From NCBI RefSeq assembly GCF_000143415.4, contig NW_003314298.1, positions 62,001-126,000 on the forward strand: a DNA stretch of 64,000 nt, written 5' to 3'. The notes under the pieces are model-generated. The model had not been told where the DNA came from. It saw nothing but the letters and a program-made list of their open reading frames with translations, and ran no database searches. Made by a program: the position numbers and the translations under genes. Below are positions 6,671 to 24,044 of this stretch, one piece after another (within the stretch, counting starts at the first letter, position 1; each line of letters begins with the position of its first letter). The DNA comes from Selaginella moellendorffii. Taxonomy: Eukaryota; Plantae; Lycopodiophyta.

Positions 6671-7932
6671 ATGGAGATGCAAGGATCGATGCCGGTCATA
6701 CAATATGTCAAGTTTGGAGGAGATCTGGAGGTATCAAGATCTGTAATCCTTTCAAAATCATCACTTCTGCCCTTGGGAATTTGTCTAGAAAGGACATGCA
6801 CCAGTTCCCTCGCCGGGACCTGGAGAGTTACTTGTAAAGGTCCAAGCTGCAAGCCTCAACCCAGTGGACTGGAAAATCCAGCAAGGAAAGTATAAGACCC
6901 TCAACATTCCAGCCCAATTCCCCTATATACCATGTAAGCGCAGTTGCCCAGAGTGCTCGATGATACACCCACACATCAATTCCCAGGTTCAGATATCAGT
7001 GGCGAGGTTGTAAGCCTTGGTCCTGGTGTAACTGGTTTCAGTGTTGGAGACAAGGTTGTCAGCTATCTAGACCACAAGGTAAATCTTTCTTGTTAACCTG
7101 GTGTTTGTGCTTAAAAGCAATCGGTCCAAATGATAATTGCACAACTAGAGAGGAGGTGGCCTTGCCAAATATGCTTCTGCAGAGGTGCGGTTTACCACAA
7201 GAATTCCATCTCAAATCTCGCCGATTGAGGCAGCTGGCCTTCCAATCGCTGGTCTTACAGCCTTGTACAGCTTGCAAGAGGCCGCGGGCATAGCAATACC
7301 AAGCAAAGACTTTCAGGGCACCATTCTTGTCACTGCAGCTTCAGGGGGAGTGGGAACATATGCGGTGCAGGTGCGTACTTCAATTCAGATAACCGTATGG
7401 TTTACTAGGATTGAGTTCTGTACAAATTGAACAGCTCGCAAAGCTCACTGGTGCTCATGTGGTGGCTACATGCGGGAGCCGCAACATTGACCTCATCAAA
7501 AGCTTAGGTGCTGATGAGGTTCTCGACTACAAAACACCTCAAGGGGCCAAACTCCAGAGCTCCTCTTGCTCCAAGTTTGATGTCATTATCCACTGCGCTT
7601 ACCATCGACCGCCCTGGTCCACCTTTGAGCATGTTCTTACTCGCAAGGGGATTGTTGTGGACATCACCCCGGCTAGCGAATCTACCACAAGCAGCCTCAA
7701 ACGCAAATTTGACAAGGCAGTGAAGTTGATCACGAGCCAAGAGGCAATCGGTTCCTTGGTCCCTTTGTATTTGACCCCTCACACATCGGGTATAGAAGCT
7801 CTCGTGGACATGATGCAGAAGGGCAAGTTAAAAACAATCATTGACTCGGTCCATCCGATTTCCAACGTTACAGCTGCCTGGTTCAAGTGCATGGAAGGCC
7901 ATGCCACTGGAAAGATTGTTGTCACTCTGTAA
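6671..7932 (+). CDS. Zn-independent MDR-family NADPH quinone/alkenal oxidoreductase, ceQORH-like (spliced)
   Basis: VPSPGPGELLVKVQAASLNPVDWKIQ, EAAGLPIAGLTAL, ILVTAASGGVGTYAVQ, SLGADEVLDYKTP, GHATGKIVV. Confidence 0.9.
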
Positions 7933-8143
7933 TATATTACAGCCCTCTTGTGACCAAGTGTGTAGAAGAGTAGTTGTCAAAAAATCTACACTCAGTATAC
8001 TTATATTGAGATTTGTAACTAAGACAATATCAAAGACGTTGCCGTCTTCGGATAACAAACAGGTCGAAATGAATGGGAAGTACTGACCAAGTTTGAGTTG
8101 AACATATGTTGCCAATTCGTCAAACAGGCCTTGGAATCTTGCT

Positions 8144-8150
8144 TATATAA
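8144..8150 (+). promoter_or_regulatory. Putative TATA box of the P450 gene
   Basis: TATATAA about 70 bp upstream of the ATG at 8220. Confidence 0.5.
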
Positions 8151-8219
8151 TACCTACAATCGTGCTCTGATCAAAACAGAGAGCTCTAGATCCATCCACC
8201 AGAAGAGAGCCATTTAATC

Positions 8220-9740
8220 ATGGTCATGGAGCAAGTCTGCACCAAGCCACAGCTGCCGCCCCAGCTGCCTCCTTCTCCAACTGGGCTCCCATTCATTGGA
8301 CATCTGCATCTCTTGGGTAAGCTACCGCATCAATCCCTCCTCAAGCTCGCCCAGCAATATGGAGATGTCATGTTCCTCAAGCTTGGTAAAGTGAACACCC
8401 TGGTCGTTTCCTCATCCGATAGTGCCAAGGAAGTTCTCAACACCCAGGACCATATTTTTGGTTCGCGCCCCAAGACGACCTTCAGCGAGACAATCGGCTA
8501 CGGTGGAGCTGGCCTGGCATTTGCAAACGGAGAAAACTGGAAGAGCACACGGAAGGTGTGCATGTACGAGGTTCTCACCACCAAGCGTGTGGAATCGTTC
8601 CACCCTATCCGCAAGTTCGAGGTGTCGCTCTTCATGAACGAGCTGCTCAAGGCATCGCGAGAGGGGTCTGCGGTGGATCTGAGCAGCAAGCTGTCGGATC
8701 TCACCTTCAATGTCATCTCAACAATGGTGTTGGGTAAGAGCTACTCGGCTAGCGCTCTCAGTGAGGCCGAGAAGAAAGAGACCATGTTTTTCAAGGAGAC
8801 CCTCGACGAGGCTGCCATTATGGCTGGCTTCCATGCAGGCGACTACCTACCAATCCCCGACTGGATGGATACGCAAGTCAACAAGATCAAGCAGTTGCAG
8901 CGGGATCTGGACCAGTTCATCCAGAAGGAGGTTGAATCGCACCGTCAGCGGCGGGATCCTGGCCAAGCCCCACGGGACTTTGTGGATGTTCTCTTGTCTA
9001 ACAGCCATATCAGTGACACCTCTATCAAAGCACTGATTGTGGTAAGTGCCGCTGACTTGGGTTGACTGGCGTTGACATGAATATGTGTTTGTGTACAGGA
9101 CATGGTGGGTGGAGGGACCGAGAGCTCCGCTGTGTCAGTTGTTTGGGCATTAGCCGAGCTGATCAAGAACCCACGGCTCATGGAAAGAGCCCAGAGGGAG
9201 CTCAAGGAGGTGGTAGGAGAGGATCGAAGCCTGGAAGAATCGGACATTCCCAACCTGCCTTTCCTGCAGGCGATTGTCAAGGAAACAATGCGCCTGCATC
9301 CCCCAGGGCCGCTGCTCATTCCGCACGAGTCAACCGAAGAGTGCGAAATAGGAGGCTACACCGTCCCAGCACGCACACGGACAGTGGTCAACATCTACGC
9401 CATCGCCAGGGACGAAGACAACTGGGAGGATCCTCTCAATTTTGATCCAGATCGCTTCATGGGCAGCAACATCGATCTCAAAGGAAGACACTTTGAGTAC
9501 CTTCCGTTTGGCTCGGGCCGGAGAATATGCCCCGGGCTCATGCTTGCAATGGCCACGGTCCAGTTCATTCTGGGCAGCGTGTTGCATGGGTTCAACTGGC
9601 GCCTTCCCAGCGGCCAGACAATCGACGACCTCGACATGTCCGAGTCGTTTGGGCTCACCGTGCCCAAGGCAGTGCCTCTCAAGTTGGTTCCTTCGCCACG
9701 CTTGGAGCCACAGATCTATGTCAAGTCGCTGTCCTCCTAA
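8220..9740 (+). CDS. Cytochrome P450, CYP71 clan (exons 8220-9041 and 9099-9740)
   Basis: PPSPTGLPFIGHLHLL hinge, I-helix GGTESS, KETMR (ExxR), PDRF, heme motif PFGSGRRICPG. A single 57-bp phase-0 intron precedes the I-helix D, as is typical of A-type P450s. Confidence 0.95.
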
Positions 9741-9800
9741 GACAACGGTTTATATCAATCGACAAAATAAAGAGTCACTTGGTCAAAACGAGATAAAGGC

Positions 9801-10825
9801 ATGTCTTTCGTAGCGAGCCATAGCAGATTCGTGCTGGCTATGGCGCACGTTCCAGATACTCAAGGCCAGGAGATTTCAGGATCAAGGCGGCAGTTAACAC
9901 CCCACGACATGTGGGTGTGGAACGATGTGAATCACTGGAAGCATTGGCATGGCATTTGGGTCATGTGGCAGCCACTCTTGTCCCCTGCGGTGAACAAGGC
10001 CAATCGGTGCATAAGGTCGCTGCGTGCTGACAACGAGGAGCGGACGCGGCTCTACCACCGGAATCAGTGGTTCCCCGTGGAGGATGATGCCAAGACGCCG
10101 GGATACACATGGGCGTATGGGCCATGGATCATGGAGGAGGCCACTCACAGCCTACCCAATGGTATCTGGCACGGCGACAAGGAGGACTTCCGGATCTTAC
10201 AGTTTGAGAACGGTGACCTGGGCTGGCTGCAACTAGAGCTCAAGCCAGACGATCCCAACTGTGTGGTCTTTGGTGAGGTTCACTTCATGCTCCCAGGTGA
10301 GTTCTTTCCTATACGTTGTCAAGTCATTGATATGTACGTGTAGATAAGAATGGTAGAGCGCCCGTCATACTGGGATATGACAAAGACAAGCAGCTGGGAG
10401 CGGCCCTCATGCTGGAAGAAACATTAGAGTCGGATGACAAGCCTCCTCCCGCATGGCACGGCACGGTCTGGGAGCAACCGCGGGCCATGGCGCAACTGGA
10501 GCAGAGCCGTGATCCACCGCAAGGGAAGTTCATCGGCAAAGAGACGATACTAACCACGAGCTTGGTGCAGACCCAAAGGCAGGCCGAGTGGAATGGTTTC
10601 ACTGGAGGAGTGGGCAACCAAGGCCTAGACAACGAGTACGCTCTTGTTCACATGCCTTACAATTTCACAGCATTCGCTCCGGCCAAGCCAGCCATTGGTA
10701 AGGAGCATGCTTTTGGGGTGAGCTGGGTTATGAGTGGTGACGAGGTGAGGATGATCTCCTGGAAGTATGGGGCTGATGGCAAGCTCCAGCATGTCAAGTC
10801 GGGCACTTACTATAAAGTGCAGTAA
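9801..10825 (+). CDS. DUF3598/BFA1-like beta-barrel protein (exons 9801 or 9840-10296 and 10344-10825)
   Basis: A 47-bp GT-AG intron joins the two ORFs in frame (MLP-D-KNGRAPVILGYD). Motifs WHGIW, IRSL, SLPNG, FENG and KYGADG match, in order, the cyanobacterial DUF3598 proteins as I recall them. Confidence 0.6.
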
Positions 10826-13362: not shown

Positions 13363-16300
13363 TTAAAACGCCTTTACAAGTTCGTTCTTCATGGCCAGGC
13401 CCAGGGGACGCAGCTCGGCTCCATCCTCCAAGCTGGATCCCGGGAGGAGAAGCGAGCGGGCGCCCACGAATGCGTACTCCCCAACGCCGTTGCTGCCAAA
13501 ATGCACGTCGCCGCCGCCCTCGTACACGTGACCAAAGAGTAGCGCGTCTCGCCCAATGCTGCTGCCGGTCTTGACGCTCAGGCGGTCCGGATTGAGAGCA
13601 TACAGTGTGTCCATGTACACACCCGCGGTGTCGATGCTCGCTCCCAGCTGCCGGAGGTAGCCTGTAGAGAGTGCCGAGCCTCTGGTGAGGTCGAGGAAGT
13701 AGCCGCACGCAACCGAGTTGACGCACTGCCACACCGTGTCCTGGAGGCTCCTCAATCCCCACAGCTCGCTCCTGCTCTTCTCCTGCACGCCCTTCCTTCC
13801 TCCAACCAGGATCCTCCTCGCTGAGATGCTGCCCAGGGACAAGACGAGAGCCGACACCATGTACGAGAGCAGGACGAGTGCCAGGAACAGCCAGTCGCTG
13901 CGGGGTGCTCGAGACGCGATCAACGCCGCCGGGAGGAGAGCTGCAAGCTGAGAGAGCCCGAGGAGAGTAGCGGGGGCCAACAGCTGCAAGAGTGGCTGCA
14001 TGCTTCGAATCAAACCGAACTTGAGCCTCGTTTTGGCAGTCGCCGTCGCCGTCTTGCAGTTGGTTTCCGGCAGCACTGCCACGTTGGGCGGAAGGCATCC
14101 GGATAGAGCAGGGCAACCGATGTTGCCGTCGTTGGAAATGTCATTGGCGAGAGGCACGTCTGAGTCTCTCAGGAGGGCTTTCCATGCACCGGGCAGCTCT
14201 GCTCCGTTCCTCACGTACTGAGCAATGTCGTAGGCCACCGACCTCCCGTGGTCTATGGACGCCGACTCCCGCAAGCTGGTTGCCGGGATCATGTCCAGGC
14301 TCGGCACACCGTTCCTGGGGTTGAACCTCATCGCCTCTGTCAGTGCGGGGTCGACAAGCTCGTCAAGGTGTATGGCGGCAACGTCCACGTAAGGGAAAGC
14401 TTGCTCGTCCCACGCGCGGGTGCAGTCGATAGCGAGGTCCCTCTCGGCGAGGCTGTCGGGAACTGGGCGTAGCTGGAGCTGGAGCACGTAGTCCACGCCT
14501 TGCGGGGACGCAAGCCTCCGTGCAAAGTCGTCTCGCAGATAGCTGGGTGAACGCTCGTCTTTGTCTCGTCGAGGCAGCGCGCCGGTGTCCGGCGGGAGCA
14601 CACCCTCCCGTGCAATCCGTCCTTCGTCAACCCCATATTGCGGATCCAGTGGCCTCATTCGGAACCTCACGTACCATTCTCGCTTGGGTGACGAAGCCGA
14701 CTTGAAAAGCCTGGAAACGTTGGAGTAGTAGTGCAGCTCGGCATATGAGTTGCCCAGACGTAGAGAGTCCCACACTGCATCGCCTCTGTGCGGGGAGTCT
14801 TTCACAATCTCCTCCCTGCGCTTGCTGCTCGTCGTCAACCACGTAACAAAGTCGGCAATATTTCTGGCGTAGAAAGCCTGGCCCGTCTTGAGCGTGAGAT
14901 CCACAAGTGACTCGTGAAGCGAACTGTGGTCGTGCCTCAGGATTCGCAGCGAAGCACCGCGGGCATCTGGCCTGGCATCGTCGTCCGAGCTCAAGCTGTT
15001 GCTGTGCCTCACAACAACCGAATACGACTTCCCCTTGGAGAAGACATCGTGGCGGGGAAAGCTGCTGTCCAGGTCTTCCAGCACAGTGAGGCGTCCCTTG
15101 CCACATATCCCAGCCCTGTGGAAGTACCTCGACTTGACGGAATGGCTCGTTTTGCCTATGTGAGCCGAGAGGTTGGCCACCGTCTTTCTGTATTCCGCGT
15201 CCATGGCCACAATCCTGCTGTCTTGCTCGTGAGCTACCGAGGCATGGTTGTATACCATTGTTGGATTCTCTACGCCCAGGTACACACCACCCTGCTTCAG
15301 TGTAAAGCCGCTCGTTGCTACAGACAAGGCTCCCAGCCACGAGCTTTCCTCCATGCAGGAGCCAGGCATAAGCACGCTCTGTGCTCCAACCACGCAGCCT
15401 GTCCCGACGTCAAGCCTCGCGTAACAACCGTTGTCACTGGTGATGACTTTTGCAAAGTCGCCCAAGTGAGATCCACTTCCCAGGTCCAGTAAATCTGGGT
15501 CCAGTATCGCGTTTATAGCTCGGACTGAAGCTCGGTCTCCAACCTTGGCACCTAGCACCCGCAGGTAGAAACACAAGGCTTCGGTGCCCGTGAGCAGGAA
15601 TGTAAATCTCGCATGTGTCGTTGCAAGGAGCCTGCGAACCAGCCAGAGACGATATCCAAAGCTCGAGTTCTTCCTCACTTCTCCCTTGCGTTCCAGCTTC
15701 CCAACCAGTATCCATTTCAGAAGCCAAGTCATCCAGCAGAGGCTGGCACCATAACCGATATAGGCACATCCCATGCACAGCACGAGCGCCAGCAGCTTCC
15801 CCTGAAGAGCAACGTATATCAAGTAGTCGACGATCGAGCTCGGGTCTTGAAACACTGAGAGCGGAATTGCAGCAGTCACGGCCCAAGGGAACGTTGACAA
15901 GAGCGATGACACTATATAGCCTGTTTGTGATTCCCTTGCTCCAGCCGGTAGGATACCGAGCTTGTCAACGAGCCACACAAAAACCACGTATCCGACCACC
16001 CCGGAGATCGCAGATACGAGGCTCACAACGTACAACCCGGCTGCTTGACACAATGTGTACAACATTGTGCTGTTCTTGTCCTGCAAAGACAAATGGTAAG
16101 AAGCCAAAAGAAATGAAAAGAAGCAATCACCTGTCGACGTGAGGGGTGAACTTTGGAAGAATCATCCTCAAGGTGACGAACTCCAAGCTGGCTGGTTCCA
16201 TCAACCTTACCCAGTGGAGACACCGACGTGGCCCTCAGGGATGCACCAAGGCCAATGAAAGAGTAGGGACCGATGGAACACCTCCGTCCTATTCTGATGG

Positions 16301-19300
16301 GCTTGAACTGGACAGCACCGGCTTTCACCTCGTGGCACTGCAGGGTTGCACCCTCTCCGATGGCAGCACCGTCACCCAGCACCACAAGCCAAGGGTCTGT
16401 AATATCTGTTGTCTCCAGCTCAACTCCGGATCCAATCTGTGCTCCCAGCAGACGGTACCACCAGTTGACAAAAACCGTTCCCCGCAACTGAGTCGCTACT
16501 ATCCTGGCCGATGCGAAATCCTGGAGCCTGTAGCATGTCCACCACCTTACGAAGTTGAGCGACCATAGCGGGACTGTGGTCCGAAGATGAAGCACCGGAA
16601 GCAGGAAGCTCGTCCCAAGACTGGCTGCCAACGCCGTGGCTGCCATGTAGAGCAACCAGCACAAGGGAGCACAGAGCACCGCAGCGACAACAGGCCGGTC
16701 TGCAACCAGGGACGTGAACTGCCTCAGGATAAACGCTGCAGGGACGAGGAGCGTCCATGCCACGTAAATGATGCCCAGGAGCTGTAGAAGAGTGATGCAC
16801 ACTTGGCGTTGGAGCGATGGAAGAATGCCGGATTCCAGCTGAGAGTCCGTCACGATCTCGCCCTCAAAATCGTCATCTGTATAAGGTCCCCCGCGGCACG
16901 ATGACAAGCTAGCTTTATCATCGATTTCAGTGCCCTGTTGCTGCTGCGTTACTACTGTCTTGCCGACGAGACCGTCCACCACGTCACACAGCTCAGATAT
17001 GCAACCAGCAGTGTAGATGTCGATGGCCGCAACGTGAACTCCCAGAAAGTTGGATAGCTTCTGTGATGCCCACACCACCGCAACGGAATCAAGGCCGTAG
17101 TTTGCAAAGCTTTGGGACGGCGACAGCTTGGACAAGTCGATGCCTGTCCGTTCGGAGATGATCTGGCAGATGAAGTTTGAGATCTCGGTCTTGCTCGGCC
17201 CCTTAGCCGAGACATCGGTTTCTGGTATCGCAGGTGGCACTACTGGCTGCGAAGACGTAGAGGACTTAGTGGTGAGCACCAGGCTCTCGACTGAGTCGGC
17301 AAGCTCTGAGATGCAGCCGGCCGTGTAGATGTCTATAGCAGCAACGTGAACTCCCAAGAAAGATGAGAGCTTGTGAGCGGCCCACACGACAGAGCTCGAA
17401 TCCAGTCCATAATCTGCGAAGCTTTTCGTGGAAAGGACTTGAGCCTGAGATAATCCCAACTTTTCAGCCAGGATCTCCGTCAGGAAGCTAGTAACCCCGG
17501 CTTTGCTACGAGCAACACTGGCAGCAGACGGTGGCGGCGTCGGTGGTATCACGCTAGGAGTCCCACTAAAAGTTCTCGACCTTCGAAGTCTTAGAATTTT
17601 CTTAGTCTTCTCAATCGTGGGACTTATGCTGTCCAGCCTGTCCTCAGTGAACTGCTTCAAACAGTCAAGCCTCCGTATCTTTCCCGATGAAGTTTTTGAG
17701 ATCGTTCGCGGCTTGACGAGCCTCACCGAAGCGACACTCAAGCCATGCTCACTCGCAACCATAGAGGAAATGTGTGCAGTGAGCTGCTCGGGATCAACCT
17801 TTGATTCGTCTCGCACTTCTGCAACCACCACCACCCCAACTTCGTCCTCGTCACAAACTTTGATCCCTTTGGAGTGGAGGGCTCGTCCAGGCGCACCAAA
17901 AGCAGCACAGCATCCAGGCCTGAGTGATCCGGAGCATGCTTCCACGGTCTTTTCAATGTCGGACGGGTAGACGTTCCGGCCCCTGATGATAATCAAGTCC
18001 TTGATCCGCCCAGTCACAAACAGCATGCCTTTGACCACCCTTCCCAGGTCGCCAGTCCTGAGAAACCTGTTAGCTTCTTCACCGCCTTCTAACCTTGCAT
18101 GAAAAGTGTCCTGACTGAGCCTCTCGTTTCCCCAGTAACCGGCACCATTGCTCGGACTTCTCACCCAAATCTCTCCCTCCACACCGTCTCCCACTTCCAC
18201 GCCAGTCTCTGGATCTACGATCCTCACATCCACGTCCGGGTTGCCCCTGTCCACATACCCGCAGCAAACCTTGCCTTGCCAGTCCACAACTAAAGGCCTG
18301 CCCCGCCCCCATGCAACGCTGACGAACACACAGTTCTCGGCCAGTCCATAACCAGGAGCAACAACCTCTTCCTTGAGCCCCGAGCTTTCCATGGTCTTGA
18401 GAAATCTCTTGAGCGTGGAGCTTCTTACCGGCTCGGCACTGACCATGAGGAACTTGAGGCACGAGAGCTGGTACGTGATGCCGGGTTGTTGGTTCATCTT
18501 GTTGACGACGAGATCAAACGCAAAGTTGGGTGCCGCGCTGTGCGTTGCCCCGTACTTGCTCATGGCCTCGAGCCACAACAAGGGCCTCCGGATGAAGTTC
18601 GTGGGCGACAAGAGAATGGCGGTGCCACCACTCACCAGCGCAGTGAAGAGGCCCCCGATGAGACCCATGTCGTGGTACTGCGGCAACCAGCTCACCAGCA
18701 CCGTCCTGGACGTGCTCTTGTACCGCCGCCGCATCAGCTTCACGTTGTGGATGAGAGCGGAGTGGGTGATGATGACGCCCTTGGGATCGCCAGTAGAGCC
18801 CGACGTGAACTGGAGGAAGCAGCATCTTTCACTCTCCTCGGCCTCCCCGCGACCCCTAAAGTAATCCTCGGCCTCTTTGTTTTGCTTGGAAACCCACAAG
18901 TCGGTGTGCATCCAGGGAAGCTTTGGCCACGACGGTCGCCCGCCGGACCTCGACAGCAAAGTGTCTCGGATTGCTGACGCGCGCACGGCGGTGTGGTAGG
19001 CGACTGTGGACAGGATGGCCTTGGCACCGCAGGCGGCTGCCACATTCTCCACTTTGGCCAGCGCATGGGAAGAAGAAGAGGAGCTCCCTCGACTCGCGAC
19101 GTCCGGAGGGATGAGGGGCACCGGCAACACCTATAGATAGCACACGAAGGTAAGCAAACAAAGCTTTCTCCTCTAGATCTCCACGACTTACATTGGCGCG
19201 CAGGCAGCCAAAGAAGGCCTCGATGAATTCCAGGCCGGGGTTGTAGAGGAGAAGCACTCGGTCCCCGTCATGGAGCGTGACCTTGTGGGTGACGAGATTG

Positions 19301-21107
19301 TGGGCGATGGTGTTGGCGTTGTTGTGGAGCTGAGCGTAAGTCCTGGAGCCTGATTCGTCACCCTTGTCGTCCAGCCAGGTGTAGAGGACCTTGTCCCTCG
19401 CCACGCTGTGCTTGGCATAGAAGTGGAGGTAAGAATCCAGGCATGGAAGGTCGGGAAATTCGCCGCCCGTGGCCTCACTCGTCACCTCCAAGTCGCCACC
19501 CTCGGCTTCATCAAGCTTGATCGCTGCGCCCGTGATCAAGTTCTGCAAAGTTTGCTTAAAGCTGAGAAACGCAGAAGAAAAAGTTCCACCTTGACTTTTG
19601 CGGGCGTTCCAAAGTTCTTGGCGATGAGGTTCATCGCGTACGCCGCATTGCGCTCCGTGAGCTCGAAAGCAAACAGGCCTCCTACATAGTAAGTATCGTT
19701 GCATCCTTGTAGCGATTCAAGCCGGTCGTATAATCCAGATCTCATATCTGTGAAACCAGAAAGAAACATGTAATGCGGGGATAGAAAATTGTAGTGTGTG
19801 TTTACCTTGCGAGCCAATGTGGGGGAAGTAGTTCCATTTTCTCTGCAAGACAATGCGTTCCACAGTGCCACCAATACGTGCCACGTCCTGGAGCAACAGC
19901 GCGGTCATCATCTCCTGGCTGACTTGAGCATTCCCATACGACCAAAAGAGATAGATGTTGGTGTCGGCATAGAATTTTTGCATGGCCACCGGGTGACCAA
20001 TCTCCTTTGCATCTTCAACATTGTCTTTGAAATAGTAAAATCCGGCCGGGAATTTATTCTCGAATCGCGAGATCTCCAGAACTGTTGTGTAGTAGTCCAT
20101 AGTCCGGACCCTGCTGAAGAGGCTGGCTTCTTCGTCTCCAAGTGTCATTAGCTCCGCGCCTGGTGGAGCAAAGGGTATCGCTCCCGAGATGACGATCTTG
20201 TCGAACTCGAGCTCCTCTGATTCCTCGCCCCCGTCCGAGCTTGAAGTGCAAACTGTGACTCCTCGGCCGGATCCTCGTCTCCGGATCTCCGTGACTCTGG
20301 TGTTCAATCGCACGCGAGGTAGCAGCCTCGCCACTCCTTGCCACAAGCCGGTGTAGCCGCCCTTGATCCTGCAAACCTTCCCAAACATTGAGGTGCGAAC
20401 GAACTCGTGCAAATACGCATAGGGGATATCCTGCTCGTGTGGGAAGCCATATCCAGAAGCCGTGTAACCAGTGGCAACAGCCTCTGGTATTCTTCCCATG
20501 CCGTGCTTGGCCGCAAATTCGGCTGCTGTCTCCGGTGCAAGGCTGCTAAGTGCGTGAACTCCAGTTTTACCAGTTGATGCTGCTTGTGCCTGATCAGAGA
20601 CAATATCTATTATCAAAACAAAGCCCCTCGATGCATGGTTAAATCACCTGAAGGTCAAGAGTGATCTGGATCATGGAGATGTAGTCTCTGGCTATCCCAA
20701 GATCTTGGTACGTGCCAGTTTTGGAGTCGACAAGGCTGAGCTTGTGAGCCGCCATGTCTTCCATGCCAACCCTGGCCACTTGCGCGAGATGCTTGATGTT
20801 GGGAGCACTCTCCCGGGCAATCACCTGACCACCCAAGTCATACGGTCGGCCTGCCAACCGTGTCAAAATTTCACCAGTGATTGATTAGTGTTGAAGCATG
20901 TATATTACCTTGGATGTCCACGCTCTCACACATTCCTCCCACGGTGTGGTGCTTCTCAATAAGTGTGACTTGCTCATATCCCAGCTTCCACAGCGCATAC
21001 GCTGCGGAGACACCGCTGGGTCCTCCCCCGACAACGCAGATCCTGCTGCTTCTTGGGAGCGACGGGTGAAGCTCCTCCAGCAGCTCATGGACTGCCGACG
21101 CTTCCAT
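13363..21107 (-). CDS. NRPS-like multidomain enzyme, ~2470 aa: FAD oxidoreductase (PAI-like) - fatty acyl-AMP ligase - ACP - ACP - TM/LbH - TM/LbH - catalase-related AOS-like heme domain - TM/LbH
   Basis: Seven exons join in frame through GT-AG introns: 21107-20909, 20850-20648, 20589-19806, 19747-19590, 19542-19192, 19130-16131, 16080-13363 (7413 nt). Motifs: VVGGGPSG, FLQFTSGSTGDPKG, WLPQYHDMGLIG, YGLAE, RTGDLG, KTSSGKIRR, YGLDS twice, RYFHRAG, RHSN, RSVAY, and hexapeptide repeats. Confidence 0.9.
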
Positions 21108-21218
21108 CTTTCTCGATGGATCAATTCGCAACTAAAGTTGTAAATCACATATATCCACACAAGAGATCTCTCTAGAGCTGTGTGGTTAAGCTATAAGCCG
21201 GCTGGCTCGCTCGAGGAA

Positions 21219-21226
21219 TTTATATA
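21219..21226 (-). promoter_or_regulatory. Putative TATA box of the multidomain enzyme gene
   Basis: TATATAAA on the minus strand, about 110 bp upstream of the ATG at 21107. Confidence 0.5.
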
Positions 21227-21763
21227 GCGCGTATGCAAGATCATAAAGGCAAACAAGGGGGAAGCGGCCAAGGGGACAACACCAAAAACAACGAGTCGTC
21301 GGCATTGGCGAGAGCATACACACTGAATATCTCTATTGCGATGCCGGGATATATGAATATACCGGCCTTGTTTGTCCTGCGCTCACTAGGAATAAGAGAT
21401 TCCAGGTGGAGGCATTTTTACCCCGTCTCTATACGCCAGAGTTGACAAAACCACATAGCCGAATTTCGAGCGACCAACATTGAGTGGACGAGAGAAAACG
21501 TATGAACTTCTAGCAGATAAAACAACCACAACGTTCACCACCCAGCCAAGATGCATCTATAGGCAAGAGATGAATGAAGATGCTCAGGTTTGCATCCAAC
21601 AGGACTAATGCAAAGGTGGAGGTTATTTTAAACGAAAAGTGGCGATCGTGGATGGAATATGCCCATTGATGAGCAAAGCAAGGGATCACGGAGCTCCTGG
21701 TAAGGTACGAAGGAATGTAGGTCTTGCGCGGCACCAGGCGCCAGATCCACACCCGCGCCCGCC

Positions 21764-24044
21764 ATGAGGAGCCGGAGCGATCCCGCCCACTGCACGCGCA
21801 CCCTCCTCTCCCTCACATTCCTCGCGGTGCTCGTCTGCTCCGTCTACTACACCCTCTTCCTCCGATCTCGCCTCCACTCCGTCCAGCAGGGCCAAGGCCA
21901 CGGGGATTTGCCCAGGAGCTCCAGCAAGGTAGCAATCACCACCGGCATTTCTACTGCCGCTGTTGATGAAGAAGAAGATGGCGTTGCCAGCCACTCGGAG
22001 GAGGTGGAGGAGGACGGCATCCACAGCCATAAGCTAGCGGATGAAGAACAGTCCGACGATGTGGTGGAGACCACGGCGGTGCAAAGTTTCCTGGTACGTA
22101 CGGCAGTGCAAAGTCTAAGGTCTCACGCTTCTTGAGCTCACATCTCCTACAATGCAGGTGTGTGACGAGAAGTTCACCGAGATAATCCCGTGCCTCGACC
22201 GGACAATGCTAGCTTACTTGAAGAACAAACCAAACTACACGCTCATGGAGCACTACGAGCGGCACTGCCCTCCTGCCGACAGGCGGATCAATTGCTTGGT
22301 GCCTCCTCCAGCCAACTACAAGGTATGCGAGGAGTTTCTCTCTGTACGAGTGAGACTGTGTTATTCGATCAGGTGCCGATAAAGTGGCCTGCAAGCCGAG
22401 ATCAAGTGTGGCGTGCGAACGTGCCTCACACATTTCTGGCATCCGAAAAGTCTGACCAGCACTGGATGGTGATCAAGGGAAACAAAGTCATCTTCCCAGG
22501 AGGAGGCACTCACTTCCACGATGGCGCTGATAAGTACATTGCTGGGCTTGGAAAGGTAGGCACACTCTTCATCTCCATTGTAGCGATGAACGTCTCGACG
22601 TCTCCCAGATGCTCAAGAATCCCGACGGAGACCTCAGCAGCAAAGGGAAGATCCGGACTGTGCTAGATGTCGGCTGTGGCGTCGCAAGCTTTGGTGCTTA
22701 CCTTCTGCCGCTCGACATCCTTGCCATGTCCATGGCCCCAAACGACGTGCACGAGAACCAGATCCAGTTTGCTCTGGAGCGAGGCATTCCATCGACTTTG
22801 GGTGTTCTCGGGACCATGAGGCTGCCTTTTCCGAGTAAAGCTTATGATCTGGCGCATTGCTCTCGGTGCCGTATCGACTGGGCTCAGCGGGATGGCATTC
22901 TGCTGTTGGAAGTGGACAGGGTGCTGAGACCGGGGGGATACTTTGCGTGGTCGTCACCAGCGGCTTACCGAGACGACGACGAGGACAGAAAGGAATGGGA
23001 CGAGATGACCAGCTTGACAAGCCGAATGTGCTGGTCCATTGCTGCCAAGGAGGGCCAAACTGTGATCTGGATGAAGCCACTGACCAACGAATGTTACAAG
23101 GAGCGGCCGAGGAACACCAGGCCTCCTCTGTGCAGTCCACAGGATGATCCTGACGCAGCATGGCAAGTGAAGATGAAAGCTTGCCTTGTGCCACTGACCG
23201 AGCGTACGTATAAACACAGCTTCCCCTTGCCAGGTTTCTCACTCGTCCGCCACCTTGCTGGCTAAACAGAGAACGATGCCATGAGAGGCAGCGGATTGTT
23301 GCCGTGGCCCGAACGTCTGGTTGCACCTCCGCCCAGGCTGGAAGAGCTACACATTAGCGACAGGGATTTTGAGGCAGACACGGTATGGTCTTTGTCCAGA
23401 TCTCGCTCGCTAGCTTGTTGACACGGTGATTGGAGTTTGCTTTGCTAGGCTGCATGGAAGGACAAGGTTGAGGTGTACTGGGAGAAGCTCGAGCTAGTGA
23501 AAGATTTCAGCGTTCGCAACGTTATGGATATGAAAGCTCACCTGGGTGGCTTTGCGGCTGCGCTCAAGGACAAGCCGGTGTGGGTGATGAACGTAGTGCC
23601 TGCCAGCGGCCCAAGCACGCTCAAAGTCGTCTATGATCGTGGACTCATCGGCTCGTATCACGACTGGTAATCAGCTCGAGCGTTGCACCGGTGCACTAAT
23701 GTGGGGTCTTTGATGCTAGGTGCGAGTCATTTTCTACGTACCCGCGTACCTACGACCTGCTGCATGCGTGGGACGTGCTCTCGGACGTAGACTCCCACGG
23801 CTGCAGCGTCGAGGATCTCCTCCTTGAGATGGACAGGCTGCTTCGTCCCATGGGATACGTTATCATCCGGGACTCGCCCGTGATGGTGGATCAGGTGAAA
23901 AAGTACCTTGGGCCCCTGCACTGGGATGCTTGGGTCCAGGAGTTCCCGGCCGAGTCGGATATGATGCAGGACAACGAGGAGGCCGTGCTGCTGGTCCGAA
24001 AGCGCCTGTGGAAACCAGGCTCGGCTTTTGGGCAAGCGAGGTAG
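21764..24044 (+). CDS. DUF248/PMT-family SAM-dependent methyltransferase (Golgi type II membrane protein), multi-exon
   Basis: N-terminal TM, IPCLD, MEHYERHCP, FPGGGTHF, VLDVGCGVASFG, HENQIQFALERG, RNVMDMKA, STYPRTYDLLHA. Confidence 0.95.

What the first reader, a model, noticed from the sequence alone, without database searches (positions are those of the whole stretch)
13363..21107. Plant NRPS-like fatty-acid assembly line: isomerase + FAAL + 2 ACP + Pls-like membrane modules + allene-oxide-synthase-like catalase in one polypeptide
Seen in sequence: one intact 7-exon reading frame (~2470 aa) with an FAD domain, an adenylation domain with FAAL-type motifs, two phosphopantetheine-site carriers, three TM/hexapeptide modules and a catalase-fold heme domain. 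Established: FAALs load fatty acids on ACPs in bacterial PKS/NRPS; A-T-TM/C1-C3 is the layout of epsilon-poly-L-lysine synthetase; catalase-related AOS acts on fatty-acid hydroperoxides. Inference: a membrane-bound enzyme that isomerises, activates, oxygenates or rearranges a PUFA and then transfers or polymerises it, giving an oxylipin conjugate or wall lipid polymer. I recall similar long proteins annotated as uncharacterised in other land plants but know no assigned function.
Basis: partly seen in the sequence, partly recalled or inferred. Interest (0 to 1): 0.95.

Follow-up and report, generated by a model that had tools for sequence, protein, structure and literature searches.

The report
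Giant plant fatty-acid membrane megaenzyme gene
This is a real, expressed 2,470-residue Selaginella gene, conserved from liverworts to cereals, that fuses a fatty-acid-isomerase-like flavoprotein, a fatty-acid activating unit, two carrier domains, a coral-type haem domain and a bacterial polylysine-synthetase-type membrane tail, and nobody yet knows what lipid it makes.

Summary
A minus-strand gene of 7 exons (21107..13363, six GT-AG introns of 47-61 nt) encodes 2,470 aa without a stop. The genome is Selaginella moellendorffii. RefSeq splits the locus into two genes, but spliced RNA contigs and about 58 full-length orthologue clusters (2,200-2,576 aa, liverworts to rice, wheat and legumes) support one polypeptide.

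Every domain call was confirmed:
- N-terminal flavoprotein, closest to the P. acnes PUFA isomerase PAI.
- FAAL-lineage adenylation domain.
- Two carrier domains.
- Three (TM pair + left-handed beta-helix) modules, as in Pls/PosA.
- A coral-cAOS-like haem domain inserted before the last module.

Three corrections:
- The plant clade lacks the FAAL-specific insertion.
- The distal Asn of the haem pocket is an invariant Lys.
- The Pls-like tail groups with tails of FAAL-primed polyketide/fatty-acid synthases (Nannochloropsis), not with amino-acid polymer synthetases.

New context: the haem and PAI-like domains are a recurrent pair. They occur together in 37 of 45 long non-plant relatives, including myxobacterial FAAL-haem-PAI-ACP-TE proteins.

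Function remains inferred: activation of an unsaturated fatty acid, flavin/haem modification, then membrane-coupled acyl transfer or polymerisation. The architecture was noted as "function unknown" in eLife 2021. The scan had already flagged the other haplotype copy (s1-405198).

The parts
13363..21107 (-). Whole coding region: 7 exons, 2,470 codons plus stop. In Selaginella moellendorffii this is RefSeq LOC9653641 + LOC112349291. The older fused model is EFJ20474.1.
   Evidence: model. (aa 1-448 are 100% identical to XP_024539066.1; aa 639-2470 are 100% identical to XP_024539254.1).
19590..21107 (-). PAI-like FAD domain, aa 1-448, exons 1-4. The Rossmann GxGxxG motif is at aa 24-32, and there is no N-terminal targeting extension.
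   Evidence: Pfam NAD_binding_8 and Amino_oxidase. Best PDB sequence hit is 2B9W, the P. acnes PUFA isomerase, E=4.6e-27 over its full length; the next hit is 1.6e-5. AF2 model pLDDT 93. Foldseek best is 2B9W at E=4e-30, TM 0.78/0.83; the next is 1e-19.
17631..19434 (-). FAAL-lineage adenylation domain, aa 485-1065 (spans intron 5). The core motifs are present (TSGSTGDPKG at 674, GYGLAE at 825, TGDLG at 924, SSGKIRR at 1046). The FAAL-specific insertion is absent.
   Evidence: NCBIfam fatty-acid--AMP ligase PRK05850 at 3e-88 and FadD32 at 7e-82. PDB hits 7R7E at 3e-80, then FadD23, FadD32 and FadD28. Alignment shows a gap of about 21 columns in all plant orthologues where bacterial and oomycete FAALs carry the insertion.
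17286..17504 (-). Carrier domain 1 (aa 1108-1180). The phosphopantetheine-site Ser1143 is at 17397-17399.
   Evidence: PF00550, 2 stretches. GLDS motif.
16965..17189 (-). Carrier domain 2 (aa 1213-1287). Ser1247 is at 17085-17087.
   Evidence: PF00550, best stretch. GLDS motif.
16227..16805 (-). Pls-type module 1: TM pair (aa 1341-1412) plus left-handed beta-helix (aa 1426-1533). Invariant His1498.
   Evidence: Hydropathy, module HMM hit, AF2 secondary structure, His invariant in 42/42 orthologues.
15241..16053 (-). Pls-type module 2: TM region (aa 1575-1690) plus beta-helix (aa 1701-1845). Invariant His1770.
   Evidence: TIGR02353 at 4e-32 and WcaF/HpsU acetyltransferase hits..
14140..15228 (-). 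Catalase-related (coral cAOS-type) haem domain, aa 1850-2212, inserted between beta-helix 2 and TM5. Key residues are distal His1886, Lys1963 (in place of the cAOS/catalase distal Asn), Arg2178 and proximal Tyr2182.
   Evidence: PF00199. 1U5U at E=1e-25. Foldseek 1U5U at TM 0.77, rmsd 3.3. Residue conservation.
13375..13992 (-). Pls-type module 3: TM pair (aa 2262-2320) plus beta-helix (aa 2359-2467). Invariant His2416, in the column of the LQTH His of Pls C3.
19131..19191 (-). Intron 5 (61 nt, GTAAGT..TATAG). Removing it gives the conserved adenylation-domain sequence GCLRAN|VLPVPL.
   Evidence: The joint is seen in RNA contigs of run X1.
19543..19589 (-). Intron 4 (47 nt), the junction between the flavin domain and the adenylation domain. 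RefSeq's LOC9653641 reads through it.
   Evidence: Spliced in X1 and retained in X2/X5 contigs..
16081..16130 (-). Intron 6 (50 nt).
   Evidence: Spliced out in contigs of all four runs laid.

Best explanation
The locus is one real, transcribed gene of Selaginella moellendorffii. It is the lycophyte member of a single-polypeptide enzyme family conserved throughout land plants. Its domain order is: PAI-like flavoprotein, FAAL-lineage adenylation domain, ACP, ACP, (2 TM + beta-helix), (2 TM + beta-helix), cAOS-like haem domain, (2 TM + beta-helix).

Shown here: the reading frame, splicing, domain identities, conserved catalytic-type residues, conservation across plants, and the relatives.

Inferred mechanism:
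1. The substrate is a free unsaturated long-chain fatty acid on the cytosolic face of a membrane.
2. The adenylation domain makes the acyl-adenylate and loads it, without CoA, on Ser1143/Ser1247 of its own carriers.
3. The flavin and haem domains act as a functional pair on the chain's bis-allylic/diene system. The flavin domain does what lipoxygenase does for coral cAOS (hydride/hydrogen removal at the bis-allylic carbon, giving a conjugated or oxygenated intermediate). The haem domain then converts a peroxide-level intermediate. The order relative to loading is unknown.
4. The three beta-helices pack as a pseudo-trimer on a six-helix membrane bundle, as modelled for Pls/PosA. Using their invariant histidines, they transfer the acyl group from the carrier thioester to a hydroxyl or amine acceptor, possibly repeatedly, and release the product at or across the membrane.
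For: - **Frame and introns:**
- **Transcription and splicing:** all six introns supported, including the exon 4-5 joint.
- **Species and public models:**
- **Orthologues:** about 58 clusters of 2,200-2,576 aa with the same Pfam set, in liverworts, a conifer, magnoliids, grasses and many eudicots. An ESM Atlas cluster is 100% eukaryote, mostly Streptophyta.
- **PAI likeness:**
- **FAAL lineage:**
- **Carriers:**
- **Pls layout:**. It matches the published description of three TM pairs and three roughly 180-residue segments forming a three-fold beta-helix domain (PMC10522769).
- **cAOS likeness:**
- **Invariant residues:** His1498, His1770, His2416, His1886, Lys1963 and Arg2178 are invariant in 42/42 orthologues; Tyr2182 is present in 40/42.
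- **Flavin-haem coupling:** of 45 non-plant representatives with at least 400 aa after the haem domain, 37 carry the PAI-like domain there. The layouts are haem-FAD, haem-FAD-ACP, haem-FAD-ACP-TE and FAAL-haem-FAD-ACP-TE. They occur in Archangium and other Myxococcota. One operon adds a patatin lipase and a PlsC-type acyltransferase.
- **Lipid-type tail:** the plant tail groups (SH-aLRT 95) with the tails of a Nannochloropsis FAAL-primed type I PKS and of a FAAL-KS-AT-KR-ACP protein, apart from canonical Pls/PosA.
Against: - No biochemical datum exists for any member. Substrate, acceptor and product are all inferred.
- RefSeq annotates two genes here. In three of the four runs, the contigs at intron 5 carry a different 54-nt skip that would frameshift the sense mRNA. 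Contigs of two runs retain introns 3-4, and the 5' part has lower depth. Full-length mRNA may therefore be a minority species in some tissues.
- The FAAL-specific insertion is missing, so strict CoA-independence is not assured.
- The distal Asn of cAOS/catalase is Lys, so the haem chemistry may differ from any known catalase-family enzyme.
- Contigs cannot prove that one molecule spans all seven exons.
- The tree grouping of the tail rests on long branches.
Confidence: 0.5

Rival explanations
1. Polymerase reading. The flavin/haem pair installs a hydroxyl or epoxide on the carrier-bound fatty acyl chain. The Pls-type tail then joins such units head-to-side-chain, as Pls joins lysines, but forming ester bonds. 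The product would be an estolide or polyester oligomer exported for a surface or wall lipid polymer.
For: - Pls/PosA tails are polymerases that use the incoming monomer's side-chain nucleophile (PMC10522769).
- The nearest tails sit at the end of a Nannochloropsis giant FAAL-primed PKS and of a FAAL-KS-AT-KR-ACP protein, whose KR would leave a 3-hydroxyl nucleophile.
- The family appears embryophyte-wide.
- Tandem carriers are present.
Against: - No product is known for any lipid-type tail.
- Canonical Pls has its conserved His only in C3, whereas the plant pattern differs.
- Known cutin synthases are unrelated extracellular GDSL enzymes (my own knowledge).
- No Brassicaceae member appeared in the lists. 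That would make it dispensable for cutin, but the search was not exhaustive.
Confidence: 0.2
2. Oxidase-plus-scavenger reading. The flavin domain is an O2-using oxidase or desaturase that makes H2O2. The haem domain is there to consume that H2O2, either as a catalase/peroxidase or as a peroxygenase on the same chain. It would not be there to rearrange a fatty-acid hydroperoxide.
For: - The flavin fold belongs to the amine-oxidase superfamily. After PAI, the next structural neighbours are true oxidases (CpaO, LkcE, polyamine oxidases).
- The haem domain keeps the distal His and the proximal Tyr/Arg.
- The strict co-occurrence of the two domains fits a producer/consumer pair equally well.
Against: - PAI, by far the closest relative, is a redox-neutral isomerase (mechanism from my own knowledge).
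- The haem domain is far closer to cAOS (1e-25) than to true catalases (0.007). It lacks the catalase distal Asn.
Confidence: 0.25
3. Two-gene reading. As in RefSeq, the flavoprotein (LOC9653641) and the adenylation-carrier-tail protein (LOC112349291, starting at Met639) are separate products in Selaginella.
For: - RefSeq models P0274 and P0273.
- Contigs retain introns 3-4 in X2 and X5. A frameshifting 54-nt skip is seen in X2, X5 and X8. Depth is lower 5'.
Against: - A start at Met639 would delete about 150 N-terminal residues of the adenylation core.
- Exon 5 encodes conserved adenylation sequence that neither RefSeq model uses.
- X1 contigs join exons 4-5 and 5-6 as modelled.
- Orthologues, including RNA-supported RefSeq models in Eucalyptus, Daucus, Magnolia, Oryza and Triticum, are fused.
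- The 54-nt skip has GTAAGC..CAG on the plus strand, so it belongs to an antisense RNA.
Confidence: 0.08
4. Non-lipid substrate. The adenylation domain activates an aryl, amino or other acid, and the enzyme makes a non-lipid conjugate.
For: - The FAAL-specific insertion is absent.
- FAAL-like folds include McyG, which loads phenylpropanoids (hit at 8e-41).
- Public annotations call some orthologues 4-coumarate-CoA ligase.
Against: - All best family and structure hits are fatty-acid--AMP ligases.
- The flavin domain's closest relative acts on free PUFAs (PMC5442254).
- The haem domain's closest relative acts on a fatty-acid hydroperoxide.
- The bacterial operon context contains a patatin and a PlsC acyltransferase.
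Confidence: 0.08

Closest known systems
epsilon-poly-L-lysine synthetase Pls and delta-poly-L-ornithine synthetase PosA (NCBIfam TIGR02353, Pls/PosA family)
   Same: Single adenylation domain, then carrier, then a tail of three (TM pair + roughly 180-residue left-handed beta-helix) modules with no standard C or TE domain. The module HMM hits three times in both. The AF2 secondary structure has the same plan as the published PosA model.
   Different: - The adenylation domain is of FAAL lineage, not amino-acid type.
- There are two carriers.
- A 360-residue haem domain is inserted between C2 and TM5, and a flavoprotein sits at the N-terminus.
- The conserved-His pattern differs: His in modules 1 and 3 plus a different His in module 2, against C3 only in Pls.
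- The tail falls in a separate clade with PKS/FAS-linked tails.
- The TIGR02353 score (111 bits on exon 7) is below the 423-bit cut-off.
Bacterial fatty acyl-AMP ligases (FadD32, FadD28/FAAL28, FadD23, PKS loading FAAL 7R7E)
   Same: 35-50% local similarity with all adenylation core motifs, and direct fusion to carrier domains.
   Different: The roughly 20-residue FAAL-specific insertion present in bacterial and oomycete FAALs is deleted in all plant orthologues examined.
[quoted passage not shown]
   Same: Best sequence and fold match over the whole domain. Motifs shared include GYG and W-x-YFPH.
   Different: About 21-27% identity. It is fused into a megaenzyme and always partnered with a haem domain in its closer relatives. 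Isomerase activity is untested.
Coral catalase-related allene oxide synthase (cAOS of the Plexaura homomalla AOS-lipoxygenase, PDB 1U5U/3DY5)
   Same: Small catalase-core fold. The distal His and the proximal Tyr with its Arg are conserved. It is fused to an enzyme that attacks PUFA bis-allylic positions.
   Different: The partner is a PAI-like flavoprotein, not a lipoxygenase. Phe replaces Thr66 next to the distal His, and Lys replaces Asn137 (invariant in plants). One liverwort paralogue clade has His instead of the proximal Tyr.
Uncharacterised myxobacterial FAAL - haem - PAI-like - ACP - thioesterase proteins (e.g. Archangium gephyra SDU49, L004:8216-15061)
   Same: The same three catalytic domains plus a carrier, each homologous to the plant domain: FAAL 33-38%, PAI-like 27-34% (E to 1e-65), haem 28-37%. 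The plant haem domains nest with them in a 99-supported group.
   Different: Different domain order, a single carrier, release by thioesterase instead of a membrane Pls-type tail, the FAAL insertion present, and Thr rather than Lys at the distal site.
Nannochloropsis giant FAAL-primed type I PKS ending in a Pls-like tail (TFJ83820.1, 6,656 aa)
   Same: FAAL start, carrier, and a Pls-like three-module membrane tail with the same His pattern as the plant tail. It is the closest clade.
   Different: It has multiple KS/AT/KR/DH/ER modules and neither a flavin nor a haem domain. It is also uncharacterised.

Membership tests
Pls/PosA family NRPS-like synthetases | A-T followed by three tandem (TM pair + beta-helix) modules and no C/TE domain | tested here: met
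   Three TM pairs. Three module hits at 1426-1533, 1701-1845 and 2359-2467, and three in every bacterial Pls-like protein. AF2 model. Layout as described in PMC10522769.
Pls/PosA family NRPS-like synthetases | Score above the curated TIGR02353 cut-off (423 bits) | tested here: not met
   111 bits on exon 7, which holds modules 2-3 split by the haem insert. The whole tail cannot be scored in one piece because of the insert.
Pls/PosA family NRPS-like synthetases | Amino-acid-type adenylation domain that activates a diamino acid | tested here: not met
   The best models are fatty-acid--AMP ligases (3e-88), against 1.4e-38 for the amino-acid adenylation model.
Pls/PosA family NRPS-like synthetases | Membership in the canonical clade with the conserved C3 motif LQTHLFEDR | tested here: not met
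   The plant tail is outside the 100-supported canonical clade. Module 3 reads LFGHVYEG: the His is kept, the rest differs.
Pls/PosA family NRPS-like synthetases | Iterative polymerisation of the loaded monomer | not testable with these tools
   Needs enzyme assays.
Fatty acyl-AMP ligases (FAAL) | ANL-superfamily core with adenylation motifs, and closest similarity to FAALs | tested here: met
Fatty acyl-AMP ligases (FAAL) | FAAL-specific insertion of about 20 residues after the GYGLAE-type motif | tested here: not met
   About 21 gap columns in Selaginella and 8 other plant orthologues, where myxobacterial, other bacterial and oomycete FAALs carry the insertion. The same gap is seen against 7R7E.
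Fatty acyl-AMP ligases (FAAL) | Transfer to holo-ACP and rejection of CoA | not testable with these tools
   Two carriers fused in cis make ACP loading likely. CoA rejection needs an assay.
PAI-type FAD-dependent fatty acid isomerases | Amine-oxidase-type FAD fold with PAI as the nearest solved structure over the full length | tested here: met
   Sequence E=4.6e-27 against 1.6e-5 for the next hit. Foldseek 4e-30 against 1e-19, TM 0.78/0.83.
PAI-type FAD-dependent fatty acid isomerases | PAI substrate-channel and carboxylate-gate residues; isomerase activity on free PUFA | not tested
   The structure paper (PMC1413795) is not held, so I could not take the residue list from a source. Activity needs an assay.
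Catalase-related allene oxide synthases / hydroperoxide-converting haemoproteins | Small catalase core fold with proximal Tyr (plus Arg) and distal His | tested here: met
   His1886, Arg2178 and Tyr2182 align with cAOS His67, Arg349 and Tyr353. His and Arg are present in 42/42 orthologues and Tyr in 40/42. Fold TM 0.77.
Catalase-related allene oxide synthases / hydroperoxide-converting haemoproteins | Distal Asn (cAOS Asn137), and Thr next to the distal His | tested here: not met
   Lys1963 (42/42 plants) and Phe1885 occupy these positions.
Catalase-related allene oxide synthases / hydroperoxide-converting haemoproteins | Fusion or pairing with a lipoxygenase that supplies the hydroperoxide | tested here: not met
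   There is no lipoxygenase domain. The partner is the PAI-like flavoprotein, as in 37 of 45 long non-plant relatives.

The most novel reading that the evidence does not exclude
Land plants carry, probably through ancient acquisition of bacterial parts, a lipoxygenase-independent oxylipin route. In it, a PAI-like flavoprotein replaces lipoxygenase as the supplier for a cAOS-like haem enzyme. The modified acyl chain is then polymerised or conjugated by a Pls-type membrane machine into an unrecognised lipid oligomer or polymer of the cell surface.
Probability: 0.2. Interest if true: 0.9.

Novelty: new variant of a known kind. Interest (0 to 1): 0.7.

Why it matters
[quoted passage not shown] Its parts point to chemistry not known in plants:
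- CoA-independent fatty-acid loading on built-in carriers.
- A flavin/haem pair that may stand in for lipoxygenase plus allene oxide synthase.
- A polylysine-synthetase-type membrane off-loading machine.

Finding the product could reveal a new class of plant lipid or surface polymer. It could also explain a widespread, equally uncharacterised haem + PAI-like enzyme pair in myxobacteria. The domain-level residues and relatives listed here make the question directly testable.

Tried and rejected
- **Fungal or algal origin**, suggested by the 47-61 nt introns. Rejected: the protein is 100% identical to Selaginella moellendorffii RefSeq proteins.
- **Haem-domain hits of about 1,060-1,190 aa as coral-type AOS-lipoxygenase fusions.** Rejected: Pfam shows haem-FAD-ACP-TE. 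Only P0166, of those scanned, has a lipoxygenase domain.
- **The 54-nt skip at intron 5 as a sense isoform or a genomic deletion allele.** Rejected in favour of an antisense RNA. Its ends read GTAAGC..CAG on the plus strand, and the other haplotype's protein model aligns to aa 1-1675 as a single BLAST segment.
- **A metabolic gene cluster in the window.** The neighbours are a P450, a Zn-ADH-like fragment, DUF3598 and a QUA2-type methyltransferase. Nothing ties them to this gene.
- **Literature.** Searches for MpACOS18, Pls in land plants, acyl-activating enzymes with carriers, and PAI homologues in plants found no functional study. One search errored and one was badly designed and uninformative. 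The PAI structure paper is not held, so PAI active-site residues were not checked.
- **Myxobacterial gene neighbourhood**. It gave only a P450 and an FAD monooxygenase-like ORF, which is not informative.

Full report
**1. The observation**

The region carries a minus-strand gene whose pieces show up as long ORFs in different frames. Reading the junctions and assembling them gives seven exons: 21107-20909, 20850-20648, 20589-19806, 19747-19590, 19542-19192, 19130-16131 and 16080-13363. They total 7,413 nt, or 2,470 codons plus TAA, with no internal stop. The six introns are 58, 58, 58, 47, 61 and 50 nt, and all are GT..AG. An uninterrupted spliced frame of 7.4 kb whose every segment hits a protein family is not a chance event.

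**2. Whose gene it is and whether it is one gene**

Residues 639-2470 are 100% identical to Selaginella moellendorffii XP_024539254.1 (LOC112349291). Residues 1-448 are 100% identical to XP_024539066.1 (LOC9653641), a model that runs on into intron 4. The older fused model EFJ20474.1 and the other haplotype's EFJ28539.1 are 97.7% and 99.2-99.3% identical. RefSeq therefore splits the locus. Its downstream model starts at Met639, inside the adenylation core, and exon 5 belongs to neither model.

I laid contigs of four public runs from four studies on 15900-21400. They skip introns, so they derive from RNA.
- Intron 6 is removed in all four runs.
- In run X1, introns 5 (61 nt), 4, 3 and 2 are removed exactly as modelled. 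A loose end at 20908 roughly fits the exon 1-2 joint; one of its nine letters differs from the expected sequence.
- The exon 4-5 joint, which fuses the flavin domain to the adenylation domain, is thus seen in RNA.

Against a simple picture:
- Contigs of X2 and X5 retain introns 3-4.
- Depth falls towards the 5' end.
- In X2, X5 and X8 the contig at intron 5 shows a different 54-nt skip (19150-19203). That skip would frameshift the sense mRNA and stop it at residue 658. However, its ends read AAG|GTAAGC...GCGCAG|G on the plus strand, which is a canonical intron of an antisense RNA, not of this gene.

Orthologues settle the architecture. About 58 clusters of 2,200-2,576 aa carry the same Pfam set in one polypeptide. 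They come from Marchantia (two paralogues), Cryptomeria, Magnolia, grasses (Oryza, Triticum, Brachypodium, Setaria, Lolium), legumes, Eucalyptus, Gossypium, Daucus and others, and several are RNA-supported RefSeq models. I rate the two-gene reading at under 0.1.

**3. Anatomy**

*(a) aa 1-448, flavoprotein.*
- NAD_binding_8 and Amino_oxidase are present.
- The best solved relative is 2B9W, the P. acnes PUFA isomerase PAI, at E=4.6e-27 over its whole length. The next hit, at 1.6e-5, matches only the Rossmann part.
- An AF2 model (pLDDT 93, pTM 0.93) finds 2B9W first by Foldseek (E=4e-30, TM 0.78/0.83). That is ten orders of magnitude ahead of the FAD oxidases CpaO and LkcE.
- The Rossmann motif starts at residue 24, so there is no room for a transit peptide.

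*(b) aa ~485-1065, adenylation domain of FAAL lineage.*
- NCBIfam fatty-acid--AMP ligase models score to 3e-88.
- PDB hits are 7R7E at 3e-80, then FadD23, FadD32 and FadD28.
- The core motifs are present.
- The roughly 20-residue FAAL-specific insertion is absent in Selaginella and in eight other plant orthologues. It is present in myxobacterial, other bacterial and oomycete FAALs. The same gap is visible against 7R7E.

*(c) Two carrier domains,* with GLDS serines 1143 and 1247.

*(d) Three modules,* each a pair of long hydrophobic helices followed by a left-handed beta-helix.
- TM pairs lie at 1341-1412, 1575-1690 and 2262-2320. Beta-helices lie at 1426-1533, 1701-1845 and 2359-2467.
- TIGR02353, the Pls/PosA terminal domain, hits at 4e-32, and hexapeptide acetyltransferase models also hit.
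- An HMM of plant module 2 hits every bacterial Pls-like protein three times and the plant protein three times.
- The AF2 model of aa 1330-2470 (pLDDT 80, pTM 0.64) shows the same plan as the published PosA model: three TM pairs under three beta-helices packed with three-fold symmetry (PMC10522769).
- Each module has a histidine invariant in 42/42 orthologues: His1498, His1770 and His2416. In canonical Pls-type proteins a His in this column (LQTHLFEDR) is conserved only in C3. The plant has it in modules 1 and 3, and a different His in module 2.

*(e) aa 1850-2212, a small catalase-core haem domain* inserted between beta-helix 2 and TM5.
- The best solved relative is coral allene oxide synthase 1U5U/3DY5 at 1e-25. 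True catalases score 0.007.
- Foldseek gives TM 0.77 and rmsd 3.3 A.
- The distal His1886 and the proximal Tyr2182 with Arg2178 align with cAOS His67, Tyr353 and Arg349.
- The cAOS/catalase distal Asn is replaced by Lys1963, invariant in all 42 plant sequences. Phe stands where cAOS has Thr66.
- One liverwort paralogue clade (MpACOS18 and Mapa_003253) has His instead of the proximal Tyr.

**4. Relatives outside plants**

*(i) A flavin/haem pair.* An exhaustive HMMER search with exon 7 found many non-plant proteins that match only the haem domain. Pfam and BLAST show these are not lipoxygenase fusions as I first assumed.
- Their layouts are haem + PAI-like FAD (P0142), haem-FAD-ACP, haem-FAD-ACP-TE and FAAL-haem-FAD-ACP-TE.
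- Of 45 representatives with at least 400 residues after the haem domain, 37 have the PAI-like domain there. Of the remaining eight, the one I scanned (P0166) carries a lipoxygenase domain.
- The flavin part of P0142 again has PAI as its best solved relative, at 8.5e-22.
- All three catalytic domains of the large proteins are homologous to the plant domains: FAAL 33-38% identity, PAI-like 27-34% with E to 1e-65, and haem 28-37%.
- A genome scan places them in Myxococcota: Archangium gephyra SDU49, other Archangium, Polyangiales and Myxococcaceae.
- One metagenomic operon reads PlsC-type acyltransferase, patatin/MFS, FAAL, haem-FAD, which is a fatty-acid context.
- In a haem-domain tree the plant sequences form one clade (support 100) inside a 99-supported group. 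The other members of that group include 11 of the 15 FAAL-haem-FAD proteins in the tree.

*(ii) The tail.* The non-plant tails most like the plant one, with the same His pattern, are:
- P0169, a fragment a source calls fatty acid synthase.
- P0189, a 961-aa ACP-plus-tail fragment. It sits in the same 90%-identity cluster as the 6,656-aa Nannochloropsis salina FAAL-primed type I PKS TFJ83820.1. I infer that P0189 is that protein's C-terminus from the ~940 unassigned residues after its last AT domain.
- P0200, with the layout FAAL-ACP-KS-AT-KR-ACP-tail.

In a tree of the concatenated modules they group with plants (SH-aLRT 95), apart from a 100-supported clade of canonical Pls/PosA proteins. Some branches are long. 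The plant tail therefore belongs to a lipid/polyketide-linked branch of the Pls-type domain.

**5. How it most likely works**

Shown:
- One frame, spliced and expressed.
- Domain identities.
- Conserved catalytic-type residues.
- Co-occurrence patterns.

Inferred, step by step:
1. A free unsaturated long-chain fatty acid is the substrate. The bases are FAAL lineage, PAI using only free fatty acids (PMC5442254), the cAOS substrate class, and the patatin operon.
2. The acid is adenylated and transferred to the two built-in carriers. Loss of the FAAL insertion may simply allow the domain rotation needed for in-cis loading (my own reasoning).
3. The flavin and haem domains form a unit.
   - In corals, the cAOS-type domain is fed by a lipoxygenase that removes a bis-allylic hydrogen.
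   - In PAI, the flavin removes the bis-allylic C11 hydride (my own knowledge of Liavonchanka et al. 2006).
   - The near-obligate pairing of haem and PAI-like domains suggests the flavoprotein takes the lipoxygenase role. It would deliver a conjugated or oxygenated intermediate that the haem domain converts.
   - A producer/consumer pair for H2O2 is the main alternative.
4. The pseudo-trimeric beta-helix domain transfers the acyl group from the carrier thioester to a hydroxyl or amine nucleophile, using its histidines as general bases. LpxA/LpxD-type hexapeptide acyltransferases do this with acyl-ACP (my own knowledge), and Pls does it with lysyl-S-T. The six-helix bundle places release at the membrane.
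5. If the modified chain itself carries the nucleophile, the reaction would be iterative and yield ester oligomers.

I put 0.5 on this overall scheme. The polymerase version gets 0.2 and the H2O2-coupled version 0.25 as variants.

**6. What is known**

Patil et al. [quoted passage not shown] They did not describe the Pls-type tail, the PAI likeness, the loss of the FAAL insertion, or the bacterial haem-PAI pair.

No paper in the library assigns a function. A 2026 preprint notes that a FAAL-clade '4CL homologue' is the most UV-induced one in the alga Mesotaenium. Whether that protein is a multidomain orthologue is not stated.

Public annotations are uninformative or wrong: 'uncharacterized protein', 'FadD28', '4-coumarate--CoA ligase', 'Amine oxidase', 'L-2-aminoadipate reductase'.

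This scan had already flagged the allelic copy on another piece of the same genome, with the same reading (s1-405198). Two notes on this window, on PAI likeness and on Asn-to-Lys, were both confirmed here.

**7. Verdict**

The thing is a new variant of a known kind: a Pls/PosA-type single-module synthetase rebuilt for a fatty acid and carrying a flavin/haem modifying pair. It belongs to a publicly visible but uncharacterised land-plant family.

The architecture has been noted in print, the gene is in public databases, and no new functional evidence can be produced here. I give 0.7.

Noticed in passing
window 19150-19203 (+ strand): RNA contigs of three of four runs (X2, X5, X8) skip 54 nt whose ends are AAG|GTAAGC..GCGCAG|G on the plus strand. 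This is a canonical intron of an antisense RNA that almost exactly mirrors sense intron 5 (19131-19191). In the sense mRNA it would cause a frameshift and a stop at residue 658. It may be why RefSeq broke the gene model here.
   Followed up: partly
window 19463-19835: Contigs of runs X2 and X5 run unspliced through introns 3 and 4, matching RefSeq's read-through model XP_024539066.1. Contig depth also drops from the 3' to the 5' part of the gene. This could reflect intron retention, pre-mRNA, or 3' bias.
   Followed up: partly
window 7411-10343 (+) and 22190-23265 (+): The neighbouring genes are a Zn-dependent dehydrogenase-like fragment (7411-7932), a cytochrome P450 in two exons (8220-9065, 9102-9740), a DUF3598 protein (9801-10343) and a QUA2-type putative methyltransferase (22190-23265). 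I have no evidence that they form a cluster with the megaenzyme gene.
   Followed up: partly
window 29455-30645 (-): A reverse-transcriptase ORF (RVT_1, 1.5e-29), indicating a retroelement downstream of the region studied.
   Followed up: no
P0284 (Marchantia polymorpha MpACOS18) and P0324 (M. paleacea Mapa_003253), haem domain: This liverwort paralogue clade has His instead of the otherwise conserved proximal Tyr haem ligand. The second M. paleacea paralogue (P0289) keeps Tyr.
   Followed up: partly
P0130 (Adiantum capillus-veneris KAI5057660.1): The fern model lacks the haem domain. Only about 58 residues lie between modules 2 and 3. This is either a gene-model error or a real loss.
   Followed up: no
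L004:8216-15061 (+), Archangium gephyra SDU49 NZ_CP102578: A 2,281-aa myxobacterial protein with the layout FAAL - haem - PAI-like FAD - ACP - thioesterase, plus about 580 unassigned C-terminal residues. A P450 and an FAD-monooxygenase-like ORF lie nearby. It is a tractable bacterial model for the flavin/haem pair.
   Followed up: partly
L011:1297-10472: A metagenomic operon containing a PlsC-type acyltransferase, a patatin/MFS/cNMP-binding protein, a FAAL, and a haem + PAI-like didomain protein. It suggests release of a fatty acid from a phospholipid, its modification and its re-esterification.
   Followed up: no
P0348 (Nannochloropsis salina TFJ83820.1, 6,656 aa): A giant FAAL-primed type I PKS of a eustigmatophyte alga that appears to end in a Pls-like three-module membrane tail. 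The tail fragment P0189 is in the same 90% cluster, and about 940 unassigned residues follow the protein's last AT domain. The ESM Atlas also lists a diatom-rich cluster of hexapeptide-repeat fragments. Pls-type tails as off-loading devices for lipid assembly lines seem widespread and unstudied.
   Followed up: partly
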